Of a DNA stretch of 64,000 nucleotides, positions 4,031 through 63,889 are shown one piece after another. Position 1 is the stretch's first letter. Each line of letters opens with the position of its first letter. Both the position numbers and the translations under genes were made by a program. This stretch comes from Octopus sinensis (taxonomy: Eukaryota): the NCBI RefSeq assembly GCF_006345805.1, contig NC_043002.1, positions 47,182,001 to 47,246,000 on the forward strand, read 5' to 3'. The notes beneath the pieces are model-generated. The model was not told where the DNA came from. It made no database searches and saw only the letters and a program-made list of their open reading frames with translations.

Positions 4031-4122
4031 TTACCTTGAAGGAATGAAAAATTGTTTATATCAACAAGAGTGTACCGAGCATTATAAACTGTTGGACAAG
4101 CACTACACCGATAGCTGCCTTA
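4031..4122 (+). CDS. Exon 1 (first in window; B-type, phase 2 to 1) of a Cys-rich repeat, putative GPI-anchored protein
   Basis: Acceptor ttttttctttttcAG, donor GTaggt; 92 nt reads YLEGMKNCLYQQECTEHYKLLDKHYTDSCL (C-x5-C-x14-C); splices in frame to exon 2. Confidence 0.8.
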
Positions 4123-4534
4123 GTAGGTTCTTTTATTTAATGCTTTCAAAGTTATTCATCAAGAATAGTGGTATATCATTGAAATAAAATTATAATTATT
4201 AAATTTCTCAAAGAATTTGTCATCTTTTCAATTCATTTTCGACTACTACATAGAGATCAAAATAGCATTTTTATAAATATCTTAATTTTGACTTGCTATA
4301 CAAATATATTATCATTTAGAAATTACGTTCGTATTATTACTCGCAAATTGGGCATTTGAGCGCTTGCTATCACAAGCAGGATTTCTCATTATTACTAACT
4401 TTAAATCATCTCATTACATTTGCAGGAAATATAATACAATTTCTTCTAATCCATATTTATAAAATCTAAACATACCTATCCTAAAGTATACCATATTTTA
4501 TTGTTCTTTTTTTACGACTCTATTTTTTTTTCAG

Positions 4535-4619
4535 AAACTCCCTGTCACACGAACAATGTAGACAATTGTAAGATCCAAATTACAGAGCCAAAAACAAAGT
4601 CAACAGAAACTATGTGTCC
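4535..4619 (+). CDS. Exon 2 (A-type, phase 1 to 2)
   Basis: Acceptor ttttttttcAG, donor GTaagt; 85 nt reads (K)TPCHTNNVDNCKIQITEPKTKSTETMC(P). Confidence 0.85.
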
Positions 4620-5487
4620 GTAAGTAAATTAACAAATTTAAGTACCTAACTAAATGAAATGCTAATTTTGATATTTTATATATGCATATATAACGTGGTG
4701 ATACGCAACCATAAATTTGTAAGGCTGGGATATAGTCAACTGAAATATCATCAGTAGATGACAATTACTTATCTATACCGAATCTAGATATAAACGGAAT
4801 TCTGACGTAGGATATCTATCTGGTTTCTCATAACAATGGCGACGATATGTTTGTGCTCGTGTGTGTGTGTGTGTGTGTAAGTGTGTGTGTGTGTGTGTGT
4901 GTGTATGTGTGTGTGTGTGTGCGCGTGTGTGTGTAAACCTATATCAATTATCCTTTTGTTTTCTTTTATTAGTAACAGACTGATGGGTATCGCCATGCTA
5001 GAGTGCCACCAATTTGGTACTGTTTCTTATTATATTTAGATTTCGGTGAAAGCGAGAGTGTGGTGTCACTATCCTCGGTTTCGATCGTTGCAGTGACGTC
5101 GGTTCGTGTAGAATCACCAATAGTAGAATAACTAATTGCTTCTTGAATGTATTTACATCCACTCCATATAGAGTTTTCAATTTCTGTGGCAAAATGTTGA
5201 AATGCTGCTGACATAAGTACCTTAAGCAGTAGCCCTATGTGGTCTTCACTTATAATGAGGAGAGTAGGATTAAGGAAGAGAAACATTATAGCCGAAGAAC
5301 AGCAGTGAATGGGGCTTAGATTAAACTGAAAAGATATTTCTAAACAATACAAAGAAATGAATGTAGATTAAAATCCACCATCTCTCTTACTTCGAGCTTC
5401 TTTCCTCATTGTATTATTTTGCTTCTCTCACTGACGTCTTCATTCTCTTGATCACATATTCTAAATTGGTTTCCCTGTTTGTCGTCA

Positions 5488-5567
5488 ACTACTACTACTA
5501 CTACTACTACTACTACTACTACTACTACTACTACTACTACTACTACTACTACTACTACTACTACTAC
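5488..5567. repeat. (ACT)n microsatellite
   Basis: Direct reading; explains the poly-Thr ORF. Confidence 0.95.
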
Positions 5568-6127
5568 TCGTGATGGTAAGATCGGTGATTTTAGTAGTAG
5601 TAGTAGTAGTGGTTATGGAAGATTACTCTTCGCATACGACAGTTTCCGGAATTTTCATCTCGATATTTAAAAAAATATTATTTAATTGTGGGGTTGGAGA
5701 TAAAGCATAACATTTTAAAAACCCATGGGACTGATGCCATCACTATAGCTGATATTCAATGGCGAGCCCCTTCAAAATAAACTCAAACTGAATATCAGTA
5801 TGCTCTCTTTTGTAAGATGAGCTGAGAGTACATTACGTAAGGATGCAGGGCATCTTGAGTAAGTTACCAGATTTATTTAAGGAAATATAAGTAAAAAAAA
5901 ATTATAGACGCGTGAAGAAAACGCATGCTTGCATACTACATACGTACTATTACATACACTCGCAAACACAATCTCTCATTTTGTGTGTGTGTGCGCGCGC
6001 GCGTGTGTGTATGTACGTATATATATATATATATATATATATATATAATATATATATATATATATATTACGGAGATGTACTTGCATAGCAAGTGACTTGA
6101 TCTGAGATCGTGTGCCGGAACGAAAAC

Positions 6128-60350: not shown

Positions 60351-60451
60351 ATATATATATATATATATATATATATATATATATATATATGTATATATAT
60401 TATATATATATATAATATATATATATATATATATACATATATATATATATA

Positions 60452-60794
60452 GGCGCAGGAGTGGTTGTGTGGTAAGTAGCTTGCTAACCAACCACATGGT
60501 TCCGGGTTCAGTCCCACTGCGTGGCATCTTGGGCAAGTGTCTTCTGCTATAGCCCCGGGCCGACCAATGCCTTGTGAGTGGATTTGGTAGACGGAAACTG
60601 AAAGAAGCCTGTCGTATATATGTATATATATATATATATGTATGTATGTGTTTGTGTGTTTGTGTGTCTGTGTTTGTCCCCCTAGCATGATGCTGGTGTG
60701 TTTACGTCCCCGTCACTTAGCGGTTCGGCAAAAGACACCGATAGAATAAGTACTGGGCTTACAAAGAATAAGTCCCGGGGTCGAGTAAAAGAGT
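60452..60794 (+). mobile_element. tRNA-derived SINE (octopus-type family)
   Basis: ggcgcaggagtggttgtgtggtaagtagcttgc..ggttcagtcccactgcgtggc..gtaaaagagt. Confidence 0.9.
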
Positions 60795-62719
60795 ATATAT
60801 ATATGTATGTATATATGTATGTATATATGTATGTATATATATATAGATGTATGAATATATATATGTATGTATATATATATATGTATATATATATATGTAT
60901 ATATATGTATATATATATACAAGCATATATACACGTATACATATGAAAAATGAGAGAGAGTGAGGAGGAGGAGAGAAAATTAGAGGGAGAGACAGTGTGT
61001 GTGTGTATGTGAGAAAGAGAGAGTGAGTGAGTGAGTGAGAGAGAGAGTGTGTGAATGAGTGAGAGAGAGAGTGAGAGAGAAGGAAACAGAGTGGCAGGGT
61101 ATAAAAAAGGAAAGATTTAGAAAAATCTGGGGTTGTGGGAAGATTGATGGTCTCATACGTCACATATGTTTATACGAAGCAGACACCAGTCTTTACCGTT
61201 GGGTGGGTCTTGATCACTGTCTCACATTATACTTTTCGTTCATAGAGCCAAGATGTGAAAATCTTCACGTTGCAGTTCAAGAATATATGCGGATGAAAAG
61301 TATAAGGATGATAAGATTCTTACGCAATACAGAATCAGCACCTCTGGTTGCTTTTGAAATCAGTTCTGCGTTGTTCTTATAAAAAACTATCAGATATCGT
61401 ACGTCGTAGCCTTCTCTTTTGAAAGGCATATGTACTTGGCTGTCATCGTGACCCTCGTGTACGTCGGTGGAAAATGCTTTCTGTCTGATTCTCTCTCAAA
61501 TTCTCTCCCACTTTCATATATATGTATGTATGTAGGCACCTACATATATCCATACACGCACACACACAAACACACACACACACGCACACACGCACACGCA
61601 AGTACACGCGCACACACGCGCAAACATACACACACACACGCACATACATACATATGGGGAAAGTTTTCTAGATATCTATCCATTATGTATATGTGCGTGT
61701 ATGTATGAGTTTGAATCTCTGTCTCCTACTTCTATCTTTCTCACTTTCTCTTTCTCTCTCTCTCTCTTCCCACCTTTCTCACTGTCTCACACACATATGT
61801 ACATGTATATATATATATAACACCGTTTTGAAAAAAATCAAATATTAAAATGTTCCCATAGCCTTCGAACGATACCGAGACAAATTATTTCAAGAAGTTA
61901 AGAATAAACCAGTGATTCCCAGATATATTTCGGTTAATTACAACACTCTACTGATTTGGCTATAGTTTCCTAACATATAACTTCACTAGTTGGTGCCATT
62001 AAGTACACATGGTCTTGGATAAATACTGGATGGACCCAATCTAAGTTGTCTATATTACTTTTCTTTTCACTGCCAGAACATTAAAATAACTGAAGAACTG
62101 TGCAACAATACTATTAGTGTTGGAAACCTTATTATAACTAGTAATTACAGTCCATCCATCCATCCATCCATCCATCCATCCGTCCGTCCGTCCGTCCGTG
62201 CATCCATCCATCCATCCATCCATCGATCAGCCTTCTGAAAACTAGTTTGTGCAGACATACATACTTCTTTACTTTTTAAATTTTAGCTCCTAACTATGTA
62301 AGCATCCACAATAGGGGCCGGGCCTAATTTGAGAATTTCGCTTAATTTGGGGCCATACTTATACTATCTCAAGTTTGAGATATACCCAACCCCTGGATTT
62401 TAAAGCTAGTTTATTGCTTATTTTTAAAGCAAATGAATTTGTGCTAAGAGTTGAAAACATTTTATTGATGTTATGCTATAAAAAAATGGCCCACATTGGA
62501 TTTCCGGAGATCAGACATGGCCCATTTGAGTCTTAGGCCATTATGCGGTAACTATTAATTCCCGATCTTAATATTTTCACTGTCCGAATTTTGATAATAT
62601 AATAGACATTTGTGCCTACTATCAAAATGTATCGGACTAATCACCTGAAATTGTTGTATCGGATGCTAAAATCCAAAATAATCTTGCATTTCGAAGTATG
62701 TTTTTACATGTTTGGACTT

Positions 62720-62930
62720 GGTGAGCTGGCAGAATCGTTAGCACACAGGGCAAAATGCTTCGCAGCATTTCGCCCGTCTTTACGTTCAGAGATCACAATC
62801 CGCCGAGGTCAGCTTTGCCATTCATCCTTTCTATGAAGTAAGTACTAGTCGAATAACGTTGTCGATGTAATCGACTAGGACCCCTCACTCCCAAGTCTCA
62901 GGCCTTGTGCCTATAGTAGAAGAGATTATA
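62720..62930 (+). mobile_element. Second tRNA-derived SINE family
   Basis: ggtgagctggcagaatcgttagcac..aaatgctt..cgttcagagatcacaatccgccgaggtc..gtcgatgtaatcgac..ccttgtgcctatagtagaa. Confidence 0.75.
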
Positions 62931-63800
62931 ATTTATTTGTAGTGTATTCGTGGAGTAGGCTGCATGTATAAAGTTTCACAGGCTGAAAGTGTCTCAATTT
63001 TTAGACATTAAATGCTAAATATGGCTTCAAATTTAGTAAAATCCTCAAGTACGGTTCAGCACACTATTTTGACTACTCGTAAAATTAATATCATAGTTAG
63101 GAGATAAAGTATTTAAGATTGACTATGTACAAAGACCCCGTCACTTTGGACAAATTTCCAGTAATTTGGGAGACCATCTTTCAAGCCTGGTTCACATTTA
63201 TCTAGAACACCTCTGGGTTAAAATCCGAATATTTAATTACTCCTACAGACATGATAGCGATTTTAACTCGATTCACTTGAAATCACTTTTCATGATGGCT
63301 TATTCTATGTTTGTCTAAACTATATTGTCATACTGATTCATACTTTCGGGCATTTTTGTTTTTCGCTTTAACGTAATCACATCACGTTGACTTCATTAGT
63401 TTTTAGTGTCTTGATTTTTCGATTTTTGAATTTGTATTTTTTTATATAAAATCTTTGATCTGAAACTCTATTGAAACGTTATGTTTGAGAAGAGTCATAA
63501 TTAATAAAACTTATAAATAATCTCACCAGCTTCTGTTTGTTTATAGTTCACTTCTTCTTATTTTTCCGAAGCTGTTTGTTTATGACGGCAAAAATATTTT
63601 TTTCAATAATCCTGTACATTTTTAAATGCTTGGATTTTAGCAAGCATAAACAAACAACAAAGGCTTTCAAAGAAAAAAAATGTGAAATATAGCCACACAA
63701 CAACCAGTGATTTGATTTACAGGCTTTATTAAATGTGACACTTCTTAAAGAAAACAAAGTTACATTGATGCTGATACATAATTTGTATTTTCTTTTGTAG

Positions 63801-63889
63801 GCGCTGCAAATCAGAATACAGTGTTCGCCATCATATTTTCGTTTTTATTAGCAGTTCAGATGCTAGAGAAATATATTTCTCTTTCTTAA
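63801..63889 (+). CDS. Exon 10 (terminal coding exon; GPI-anchor-signal-like tail)
   Basis: Acceptor tattttcttttgtAG; phase 1 reads (G)AANQNTVFAIIFSFLLAVQMLEKYISLS* ending at TAA 63887-63889; small-residue S-G-A-A, polar spacer, hydrophobic stretch. Confidence 0.8.

What the first reader, a model, noticed from the sequence alone, without database searches (positions are those of the whole stretch)
4031..63889. Hidden 10-exon gene encoding a tandem six-cysteine-module surface protein built from exon pairs
Ten 64-92 nt exons with GT-AG boundaries alternate strictly between phase 2-to-1 and 1-to-2 and splice to 841 nt (279 aa plus stop) with no internal stop. Each A+B exon pair encodes one ~55-60 aa module, C-x5-7-C-x13-15-C-x8-C-x5-6-C-x11-14-C, joined to the next by only 3-4 residues. 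The last Cys of each A exon and C4 at position 8 of each B exon are invariant in place, while other residues have diverged almost completely. I cannot assign it to a named family; it loosely recalls helical Cys-rich DUF19-like modules of invertebrates (inference). It may be a lineage-specific, exon-pair-duplicated cell-surface recognition protein. The ATG, signal peptide and at least one A-type exon should lie upstream of the window.
Basis: partly seen in the sequence, partly recalled or inferred. Interest (0 to 1): 0.85.

Follow-up and report, generated by a model that had tools for sequence, protein, structure and literature searches.

The report
Fast-evolving octopus cysteine-module surface gene
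The ten small exons are real and form the last 279 residues of an Octopus sinensis gene that RefSeq already lists as uncharacterised. It encodes a probably membrane-tethered chain of six helical cysteine-stapled modules, and its protein sequence changes about three times faster than its own introns.

Summary
The exon chain is confirmed exactly. Ten AG/GT-bounded + strand exons total 841 nt and give 279 aa plus stop. The product is 100% identical to residues 102-380 of RefSeq 'uncharacterized protein LOC115213476' (Octopus sinensis), so the gene is annotated, not hidden.

The full gene has 14 coding exons: a signal-peptide exon, six A/B exon pairs and a terminal GPI-signal-like exon. Each pair is a class 1-1 module split by a phase-2 intron. 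One module (window exons 4-5) has four cysteines, not six.

Only octopod relatives were found: three clustered paralogues in each of two Octopus species, and one in Argonauta. Pfam, PDB sequence and profile searches, hhalign and Foldseek give no support for GDNF/GAS1 (UniProt's automatic label for two homologues), RECK-CC or DUF19. AlphaFold2 predicts all-helical modules at moderate confidence.

New here: between O. sinensis and O. bimaculoides the module exons are 67-85% identical while flanking introns are about 93.5% identical. dN is 0.23 against an intron K of 0.068 (p about 1e-21). A second paralogue shows the same. This indicates positive selection on a surface binding protein. Function remains inferred.

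The parts
4031..4122 (+). Gene exon 5. B-type exon (1 leading, 1 trailing base) of module 2, residues 102-131, Cys109/115/130.
   Evidence: AG acceptor and GT donor. Part of the 841-nt splice product identical to P0001.
4535..4619 (+). Gene exon 6. A-type exon (2 leading, 2 trailing bases) of module 3, residues 133-159, C-x7-C-x15-C.
20101..20192 (+). Gene exon 7. B-type exon of module 3, residues 161-190, C at position 8 then x6-C-x14-C.
   Evidence: It is 79% nt identical to the O. bimaculoides orthologue.
25695..25758 (+). Gene exon 8. A-type exon of module 4, residues 192-211. Only two Cys (C1 and C3); C2 is lost.
   Evidence: Found by mapping P0001 and confirmed. It is the fastest-evolving exon: 67% nt identity against 87-95% in the flanking introns.
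26958..27046 (+). Gene exon 9. B-type exon of module 4, residues 213-241. Only two Cys (C5 and C6), with no Cys at position 8.
35697..35769 (+). Gene exon 10. A-type exon of module 5, residues 243-265, C-x5-C-x13-C.
   Evidence: It lies about 630 bp downstream of an intronic LTR-retroelement RNase H remnant.
45769..45857 (+). Gene exon 11. B-type exon of module 5, residues 267-295.
51736..51820 (+). Gene exon 12. A-type exon of module 6, residues 297-323, C-x7-C-x15-C. It carries the family-invariant N-S-T sequon (N316).
55946..56028 (+). Gene exon 13. B-type exon of module 6, residues 325-351.
63801..63889 (+). Gene exon 14, the terminal coding exon, residues 353-380 plus TAA. Small residues S-G-A-A, a polar spacer NQNT, a 15-residue hydrophobic stretch, then EKYISLS. 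This looks like a GPI-attachment signal or a short membrane anchor.
   Evidence: It is the most conserved exon, 96-98% nt identity between species with no synonymous differences in this gene.

Best explanation
The window is CM016864.1:47,182,001-47,246,000 of Octopus sinensis. It holds exons 5-14 of LOC115213476, a 14-exon, 78-kb gene for a 380-aa protein.

Shown:
- Exon 1 encodes a signal peptide and ends in phase 1.
- Exons 2-13 are six A/B pairs. Each pair is a class 1-1 module of 51-59 aa, flanked by phase-1 introns and split by a phase-2 intron. That layout allows tandem duplication of the pair without breaking the frame.
- Exon 14 encodes a hydrophobic C-terminal tail.
- The gene is the middle member of a three-gene cluster that is syntenic in O. 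bimaculoides. Only octopods have recognisable relatives.
- The cysteine framework, the splice sites and the terminal exon are conserved. The rest of the ectodomain has replacement changes at about 3.3 times the intron substitution rate in two of the three orthologue pairs.

Inferred:
- The protein enters the secretory pathway and folds into six short helical modules. Each module has a short helix, a long helix carrying C3 and C4, and a third helix ending at C6.
- Each module is stapled by up to three disulfides. The likely pairing is C1-C5, C2-C4, C3-C6, because module 1 lacks C1 and C5 and module 4 lacks C2 and C4.
- The protein is tethered to the outer face of the cell membrane by a GPI anchor attached near S351-A353, or by the short hydrophobic tail itself.
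- It acts as a binding or recognition surface. The A-exon halves are the variable part and the B-exon halves are the scaffold.
- Its partner co-evolves with it. Candidates are a gamete, pathogen, self/non-self or chemical-contact partner.
For: Gene model:
- Searches show 100% identity of the splice product to the RefSeq protein.
- Searches give the chromosomal placement, the 14 exons and a 1143-nt CDS that translates exactly to P0001.
- Searches show the same exon count and phases in LOC115212988, LOC115213072 and O. bimaculoides LOC106882236.

Internal duplication: in-register hhalign matches between modules and identical phase pattern.

Cluster and synteny.

Lineage restriction:
- One search found seven octopod proteins only.
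-, a full HMMER scan of 1.84e9 representatives, found only these plus one unnamed EukProt protein at E=1.5e-7.

Helical prediction: AlphaFold2 pLDDT 65.7 for the full length and 72.5 for residues 96-245, all helix.

Selection in this gene against O. bimaculoides LOC128248134:
- 140 of 218 aligned residues are identical.
- Nd is 104 of 534 non-synonymous sites, against 508 differences in 7800 intron sites. Fisher p=1.6e-21, dN 0.226, intron K 0.068.
- 4-fold sites in conserved codons differ at 1 of 40.

Selection in LOC115213072 against LOC106882236:
- Exons are 81.9% identical and introns 93.6%.
- dN is 0.222 against K 0.067, p=8.6e-35. 4-fold sites differ at 6 of 78.

Changes fall on both species' branches, and paralogues within a species are no closer than paralogues between species, which argues against gene conversion. 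Non-Cys conservation is 0.24-0.57 in A exons and 0.44-0.79 in B exons.
Against: - No transcript, protein, localisation or binding data were available, so expression rests on RefSeq and UniProt gene models and on conservation.
- The GPI/TM call is by eye. The hydrophobic stretch is only about 15 residues and is followed by 7 conserved residues. The tail is more conserved than a cleaved GPI signal needs to be.
- The structure models are only moderately confident (7-sequence alignment), and I could not read coordinates, so the disulfide pairing is indirect.
- The selection test uses two species, pairwise counts and intron flanks as the neutral yardstick. Intron flanks may be slightly constrained, and NG86 dS (0.19-0.24) is inflated by multi-hit codons.
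- The third orthologue pair is near neutral (dN 0.092, dS 0.090).
Confidence: 0.6

Rival explanations
1. It is a very divergent member of the GDNF/GAS1 (GFR-alpha-like) superfamily. It would act like GFR-alpha or GAS1, as a GPI-anchored co-receptor that presents a secreted ligand to a signalling receptor.
For: - UniRef names two O. bimaculoides family members (A0A0L8HEN3, A0A0L8FN98) 'GDNF/GAS1 domain-containing protein'.
- The gross architecture is the same: signal peptide, tandem all-helical Cys-rich units and a GPI-like tail.
- The best, non-significant hhalign stretch pairs MKNC-x5-C-x2-Y of module 2 with AKAC-x5-C-x2-Y of GFR-alpha-1 D2.
Against: - No PF02351 hit at E<=10 for six family members or five module pieces.
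- The family profile gives 0 hits at E<=10 against PDB sequences, although GFR-alpha-1/2/3 and GFRAL are present there.
- hhalign against GFR-alpha-1 D2/D3 gives E 0.29-0.39 and probability below 1%.
- Foldseek finds no GFR-alpha chain. The best E is 0.26 and 3.1, to generic helical repeats.
- GFR-alpha-like domains have 10 Cys (PMC3527400); these modules have 6 or 4.
- Conserved developmental co-receptors are not expected to change at three times the neutral rate.
Confidence: 0.12
2. It is a secreted product, not a surface receptor. For example it could be a component of egg coat, mucus, saliva or seminal fluid, with the C-terminal hydrophobic exon acting only as a sorting or propeptide element or being lost after cleavage.
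For: - Signal peptide, disulfide-rich small modules and tandem gene duplication.
- Exons evolve faster than introns. From my own knowledge, this is the pattern described for secreted toxins and reproductive proteins.
Against: - The terminal exon is retained in all full-length members and is the best conserved part of the protein.
- Small omega-like residues followed by a hydrophobic tail fit membrane attachment.
- No tissue data point to a gland.
Confidence: 0.15
3. The high exon divergence reflects relaxed constraint, with the genes decaying, or exon-limited gene conversion between paralogues. It would not reflect adaptive change.
For: - Pairwise NG86 omega is close to 1: 1.07 between paralogues, 1.19 for this orthologue pair and 1.03 for a second pair.
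- Three similar genes lie within 300 kb.
Against: - Replacement divergence (0.22-0.23) significantly exceeds the intron rate (0.067-0.068) and the 4-fold-site rate (1/40, 6/78). Neutral decay cannot produce that.
- The five full-length gene models checked have intact reading frames and canonical splice sites.
- Every framework Cys is invariant across the family alignment.
- Within-species paralogue identities (53%, 48%) are no higher than between-species ones (52%, 44%), so there is no sign of concerted evolution.
Confidence: 0.06

Closest known systems
GFR-alpha / GAS1 / Drosophila Gfrl (GDNF/GAS1 domain proteins, Pfam PF02351, IPR016017)
   Same: Extracellular, all-helical, disulfide-rich domains in tandem behind a signal peptide, ending in a GPI signal. 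UniProt automatically gives this name to two homologues.
   Different: These domains are about 90-100 aa with 10 Cys (PMC3527400), against 51-59 aa with 6 or 4 Cys here. No profile, sequence or fold match was found. They are slowly evolving and pan-bilaterian, whereas this family is octopod-only and fast evolving.
RECK CC domains
   Same: Small all-alpha modules with three disulfides, in tandem copies at the N-terminal part of a GPI-anchored protein. They are class 1-1 modules flanked by phase-1 introns (PMC7502776, PMC12842694). They are also a module type confined to one protein family.
   Different: The RECK motif is C2-X7-8-C-X3-C-X12-22-C-X9-12-C (PMC12842694); here it is C-x5-7-C-x8-15-C-x8-C-x5-6-C-x11-14-C. 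No RECK chain appears among the Foldseek hits listed. There are no Kazal or EGF parts. RECK is a conserved single-copy gene.
EukProt protein g1403.t1 (P0008), an unnamed tandem-repeat protein
   Same: It is the only non-octopod hit (E=1.5e-7, five matched stretches). It has a signal peptide, five tandem Cys repeats with the same core spacing C-x7-10-C-x15-C-x8-C-x3-5-C, and a hydrophobic C-terminus.
   Different: Its repeats are about 90 aa with 8 Cys, including a CxC. The organism and function are unknown, and it has only one further relative, from a metagenome. Common descent and convergence cannot be told apart.
Rapidly evolving secreted families recognised by gene structure, such as aphid 'bicycle' genes (PMC9168663)
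   Same: A secreted family with many small exons, evolving so fast that ordinary sequence searches find few homologues, while the exon-intron layout stays recognisable (abstract of PMC9168663, seen). Here too, exon count and phases are kept while sequence diverges.
   Different: This is an analogy of evolutionary mode only, with no homology. I read only the abstract of that paper. Those genes are insect effector candidates; this one has a membrane-anchor-like tail and regular six-Cys modules.

Membership tests
Octopod LOC115213476-like family (RefSeq, unnamed) | Identity or clear homology over the full length to the RefSeq proteins | tested here: met
   The splice product equals residues 102-380 of P0001. 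The profile search gives E from 1e-88 to 1e-219 for six relatives.
Octopod LOC115213476-like family (RefSeq, unnamed) | 14 coding exons: a signal exon, six A/B pairs with phases 1-2-1, and a terminal exon | tested here: met
GDNF/GAS1 (GFR-alpha-like) domain, PF02351 / IPR016017 | Match to the Pfam GDNF profile | tested here: not met
   No PF02351 hit at E<=10 for P0001 and P0003-P0007, or for module-level pieces. SMART SM00907 is probably the source of UniProt's name, and it could not be run.
GDNF/GAS1 (GFR-alpha-like) domain, PF02351 / IPR016017 | Characteristic arrangement of 10 cysteines per domain (PMC3527400) | tested here: not met
   Modules have 6 Cys (M2, M3, M5, M6) or 4 Cys (M1, M4) in 51-59 aa.
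GDNF/GAS1 (GFR-alpha-like) domain, PF02351 / IPR016017 | Sequence or profile similarity to solved GFR-alpha-1/2/3 or GFRAL | tested here: not met
   The profile against PDB sequences gives 0 hits at E<=10, and those chains are in the library. hhalign gives E 0.29-0.39.
GDNF/GAS1 (GFR-alpha-like) domain, PF02351 / IPR016017 | Five-helix, five-disulfide GFR-alpha fold | tested here: inconclusive
   Foldseek of both AlphaFold2 models finds no GFR-alpha chain. The models have pLDDT of only 66-72, and coordinates could not be inspected.
GDNF/GAS1 (GFR-alpha-like) domain, PF02351 / IPR016017 | [quoted passage not shown] | tested here: inconclusive
   The sequence features are present. No GPI or signal-peptide predictor or experiment was available.
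RECK CC domain | Cys motif C2-X7-8-C-X3-C-X12-22-C-X9-12-C (PMC12842694) | tested here: not met
   There is no CC doublet and no C-X3-C. The spacing here is C-x5-7-C-x8-15-C-x8-C-x5-6-C-x11-14-C.
RECK CC domain | Class 1-1 module flanked by phase-1 introns (PMC7502776) | tested here: met
   Every A/B pair is flanked by phase-1 introns. This is a shared gene-architecture feature and not proof of homology.
RECK CC domain | Occurs in RECK orthologues together with Kazal and EGF-like regions | tested here: not met
   The 380-aa protein consists only of the six modules. There is no Kazal or EGF Pfam hit.
   No hit at E<=10.

The most novel reading that the evidence does not exclude
The A/B exon pair encodes a previously undescribed extracellular fold: a three-helix, three-disulfide class 1-1 module that exists only in octopods. 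The three clustered genes would be species-specific recognition molecules under some of the strongest positive selection yet documented in a cephalopod. Possible roles are gamete recognition, immune recognition or contact recognition such as sucker self/non-self discrimination.
Probability: 0.25. Interest if true: 0.75.

Novelty: new variant of a known kind. Interest (0 to 1): 0.5.

Why it matters
Cephalopod genomes hold many lineage-specific genes with no assigned role. This one has a very clean origin story: one exon pair copied six times, then the whole gene copied three times. It also has an unusually strong adaptive signal, with coding exons diverging about three times faster than their own introns between two Octopus species while every framework cysteine and splice site stays fixed. 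That pattern is typical of proteins in a molecular arms race or in mate recognition.

The family therefore gives a concrete, testable entry point into species-specific recognition in octopuses. It may also yield a new small helical disulfide scaffold. In addition, the case shows that UniProt's automatic 'GDNF/GAS1 domain' label on two homologues is not backed by any test available here.

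Tried and rejected
- My first splice-site and Cys-count scans found seven exons. They missed 25695-25758 and 26958-27046, which have two Cys each, and left 35697-35769 as an unselected candidate. They also threw up false candidates (43576-43639, inside a repeat, and 57029-57110 and 57997-58081, in microsatellite). 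These were dropped once P0001 was mapped.
- Pfam on module pieces and on six full proteins gave only noise: zf-CCCH E about 1, DUF5124, Imm50.
- PDB sequence searches with one piece and with the family profile gave no hits.
- Foldseek with the full-length model and the 150-residue model returned only generic helical repeats such as 14-3-3 and TPR, with E>=0.26.
- hhalign against GFR-alpha-1 D2/D3 was not significant.
- A search seeded with P0008 found only one unnamed metagenomic relative.
- Literature searches for the LOC identifiers and for octopus plus GDNF/cysteine-rich terms found nothing.
- I considered a Kunitz-like spacing for the first three Cys. I rejected it because the later spacing differs and Pfam is silent.
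- I considered a YxxPhi sorting motif (Y-I-S-L) in the conserved tail. I did not adopt it because the Tyr sits only about 3 residues after the hydrophobic stretch.
- NG86 dS as the neutral yardstick was rejected in favour of intron and 4-fold-site divergence, because 29 of 78 replaced codons carry 2-3 changes.
- Rfam and tRNA scans of the window were empty.
- Loci L003, L005 and L008 never became readable by scripts and had to be re-fetched.

Full report
**1. What is in the window**

The window is AT-rich and microsatellite-rich eukaryotic DNA. A scan for AG...GT-bounded open segments with cysteines found six convincing small exons plus a terminal exon. They share two recurring layouts. One is 'xxC-x7-C-x15-C' with 2 leading and 2 trailing bases. 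The other is 'x7-C-x5-C-x14-C' with 1 leading and 1 trailing base.

A padded concatenate of these pieces hit NCBI 'uncharacterized protein LOC115213476 [Octopus sinensis]' (P0001, 380 aa) at E=7.5e-123. Mapping P0001 back on the window gave the three exons I had not yet placed.

The ten exons are 4031-4122, 4535-4619, 20101-20192, 25695-25758, 26958-27046, 35697-35769, 45769-45857, 51736-51820, 55946-56028 and 63801-63889. They sum to 841 nt and all have canonical splice sites. Their translation is identical to residues 102-380 of P0001. The gene, however, is already a RefSeq model.

**2. The whole gene**

The chromosomal locus is L001 (CM016864.1:47,157,818-47,255,889, assembly GCA_006345805.1), and the window is L001 24184-88183.

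Four more coding exons lie upstream, at window coordinates -14182..-14131 (ATG and signal peptide, 52 nt), -6853..-6766 (A), -4333..-4245 (B) and -878..-806 (A). The 14 exons give a 1143-nt CDS that translates exactly to P0001.

In standard terms every A/B pair is flanked by phase-1 introns and split by a phase-2 intron. The signal exon ends in phase 1 and the terminal exon starts after a phase-1 intron. The mature protein is thus six class 1-1 modules and nothing else. This layout lets an exon pair duplicate in tandem without breaking the frame (principle as in PMC7502776).

Module-against-module hhalign gives weak but in-register matches: M3-M4 E=1.4e-5, M5-M6 1.3e-3, M4-M6 4e-3 and M3-M6 6e-3.

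- Module 4 (window exons 4 and 5) has four Cys, lacking C2 and C4.
- Module 1, upstream of the window, also has four Cys, lacking C1 and C5.

That cysteines are lost in these pairs while C3 and C6 are always present suggests the pairing C1-C5, C2-C4, C3-C6. This is an inference.

**3. Family and neighbourhood**

A profile search recovered only octopod proteins:
- O. sinensis: LOC115213476, LOC115212988 and LOC115213072.
- O. bimaculoides: LOC128248134, LOC106871163 and LOC106882236.
- Argonauta hians: one protein.

A filter-free HMMER scan of 1.84e9 representatives added only one unnamed EukProt protein. It is P0008, with E=1.5e-7, five tandem 8-Cys repeats and a hydrophobic C-terminus. A search seeded with P0008 led no further.

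The three O. sinensis genes are each about 80 kb long. They sit side by side at 47.05-47.35 Mb with orientation +, +, -. The order of the first two is conserved on O. bimaculoides CM046606.1, and the third lies next to them. LOC115212988, LOC115213072 and LOC106882236 all keep the 14-exon, same-phase layout. No extra module exons hide in the window's introns.

**4. What the protein looks like**

- The N-terminus (MGTKMNLIYVVPFLFLAVVG/SDE) has the form of a cleavable signal peptide, judged by eye.
- AlphaFold2 predicts an all-helical chain. pLDDT is 65.7 for the full length and 72.5 for residues 96-245.
- The predicted pattern per module is a short helix between C1 and C2, a long helix carrying C3 and C4, and a third helix between C5 and C6.
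- An N-S-T sequon in module 6 is invariant.
- The C-terminus is S-G-A-A, then N-Q-N-T, then a 15-residue hydrophobic stretch, then EKYISLS. This is GPI-signal-like. From my own knowledge, Thy-1 also has a few polar residues after its hydrophobic stretch.
- The tail is the best conserved part of the family, which a cleaved signal would not require. A short membrane anchor therefore remains possible.

**5. Comparison with known families**

UniRef calls two O. bimaculoides members 'GDNF/GAS1 domain-containing protein'. I tested this and found no support:
- Pfam PF02351 does not hit any member or piece at E<=10.
- The family profile finds nothing in PDB sequences at E<=10, although GFR-alpha-1/2/3 and GFRAL are there.
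- hhalign against GFR-alpha-1 D2/D3 gives E 0.29-0.39.
- Foldseek returns only generic helical repeats.
- GFR-alpha-like domains have ten cysteines (PMC3527400), whereas these modules have six or four.

I therefore do not file it as a GDNF/GAS1 member. It may still work in a similar way, as a tethered helical binding platform.

RECK CC domains share the module logic: all-alpha, three disulfides, class 1-1, in a GPI-anchored protein (PMC7502776, PMC12842694). They have a different Cys motif and no detectable similarity.

**6. Evolutionary rate (new result)**

I compared this gene with its positional orthologue in O. bimaculoides over exons 7-14.

| Measure | Value |
|---|---|
| nt identity, module exons 7-13 | 67-85% |
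| nt identity, well-aligned flanking introns | 92-95% |
| Intron flanks overall | 7292/7800 identical, K=0.068 |
| Aligned codons replaced | 78 of 218, of which 29 need 2-3 nt changes |
| 4-fold sites differing in conserved codons | 1 of 40 |
| Replacement differences | 104 of 534 sites, dN=0.226 |
| Fisher test against the intron rate | p=1.6e-21, dN/K about 3.3 |

The pair LOC115213072 and LOC106882236 behaves the same way over all 14 exons:
- Exons are 81.9% identical and introns 93.6%.
- dN is 0.222 against K 0.067.
- 4-fold sites differ at 6 of 78, and p=8.6e-35.

The pair LOC115212988 and LOC106871163 is near neutral, with dN 0.092 and dS 0.090.

Substitutions fall on both species' branches: 28 on the O. 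sinensis branch, 15 on the O. bimaculoides branch and 38 unpolarised. Paralogues within a species are no more alike than paralogues between species, so gene conversion is unlikely. Framework cysteines, splice sites and the terminal exon (96-98% identity) are conserved, so this is not decay. Variation is concentrated in the A-exon halves.

The simplest reading is positive, diversifying selection on an exposed binding surface.

**7. Verdict**

- Observation: confirmed, with one module mis-described.
- Interpretation: partly supported. This is a real, lineage-restricted, exon-pair-duplicated gene for a probably surface-tethered protein. It is not hidden, and it is not DUF19-like.
- Mechanism: a tethered array of six disulfide-stapled helical modules acting as a rapidly co-evolving recognition surface. 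This is inferred; neither expression nor partner is shown.
- Novelty: a new variant of a known kind, namely class 1-1 disulfide-rich extracellular modules on a membrane tether, with no detectable homology to any curated family.
- Interest: moderate. The structural claim is ordinary annotation, but the result that exons evolve faster than introns is striking and testable.

Noticed in passing
window 63801-63889 (terminal exon); also L007/L009 exon 14: The terminal exon is 96-98% identical between O. sinensis and O. bimaculoides. That is above the intron level (about 93.5%), and this gene has no synonymous differences there, while the neighbouring module exons are 67-85% identical. The tail ...LLAVQMLE(K/R)YISLS is almost invariant across paralogues. 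This is more constraint than a cleaved GPI signal should need, and it is unexplained.
   Followed up: partly
L004 10001-10163 (O. bimaculoides LOC128248134); equivalent ORF at window 20030-20197: The 243-aa RefSeq model of the O. bimaculoides orthologue starts at an intronic ATG and reads through the acceptor of exon 7 (first 'exon' 163 nt), so it is probably a truncated model. I did not search for its upstream exons 1-6.
   Followed up: partly
L006 51090-51180 (O. bimaculoides LOC106871163): The current model XP_014772974.2 (357 aa) reads past the donor of exon 13 and ends '...ECSGK*', so it lacks the terminal exon. An earlier version in the same cluster has 381 aa.
   Followed up: partly
window 40665-41926 (+) and 38732-38998 (+): Non-LTR retrotransposon reverse-transcriptase fragments (Pfam RVT_1, E=4.7e-9 and 5.4e-5) lie in the intron between exons 35697-35769 and 45769-45857. 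Related ORF fragments occur at 39108-39635.
   Followed up: partly
window 32503-35064 (+): An LTR-retroelement remnant lies in the same intron as, and about 630 bp upstream of, exon 35697-35769. It comprises a DUF7083 gag-like piece (E=6.5e-11), a CCHC-knuckle-like ORF near 33088-33196, and an RNase H domain (RT_RNaseH_2, E=1e-22) at 34537-35064.
   Followed up: partly
window 17827-19587: Blocks of 300 nt at 100% identity recur at a spacing of 1054-1055 nt, so this looks like a tandem duplication of about 1.05 kb. It carries a LINE-like ORF on the minus strand (18225-18782 and 18995-19837). It is either a very recent duplication or an assembly artefact.
   Followed up: partly
window 13338-14677 and 16432-17770: This is a large inverted repeat. 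One arm pair of 401 nt is 100% complementary and others are 82-95%. It flanks a microsatellite-rich core of about 1.8 kb inside the 15.5-kb intron.
   Followed up: partly
window 58300-60300: A long imperfect CA/TG-type microsatellite block gives the strongest GC skew in the window (-0.61) and spurious ORFs of up to 559 aa (HTHT.../CVCV...).
   Followed up: no
P0008 (EukProt g1403.t1, not in the window): This is the only non-octopod protein matching the family profile (E=1.5e-7). It has five tandem repeats of about 90 aa with the same C-x15-C-x8-C core spacing, a signal peptide and a hydrophobic C-terminus. The source organism is unknown.
   Followed up: partly
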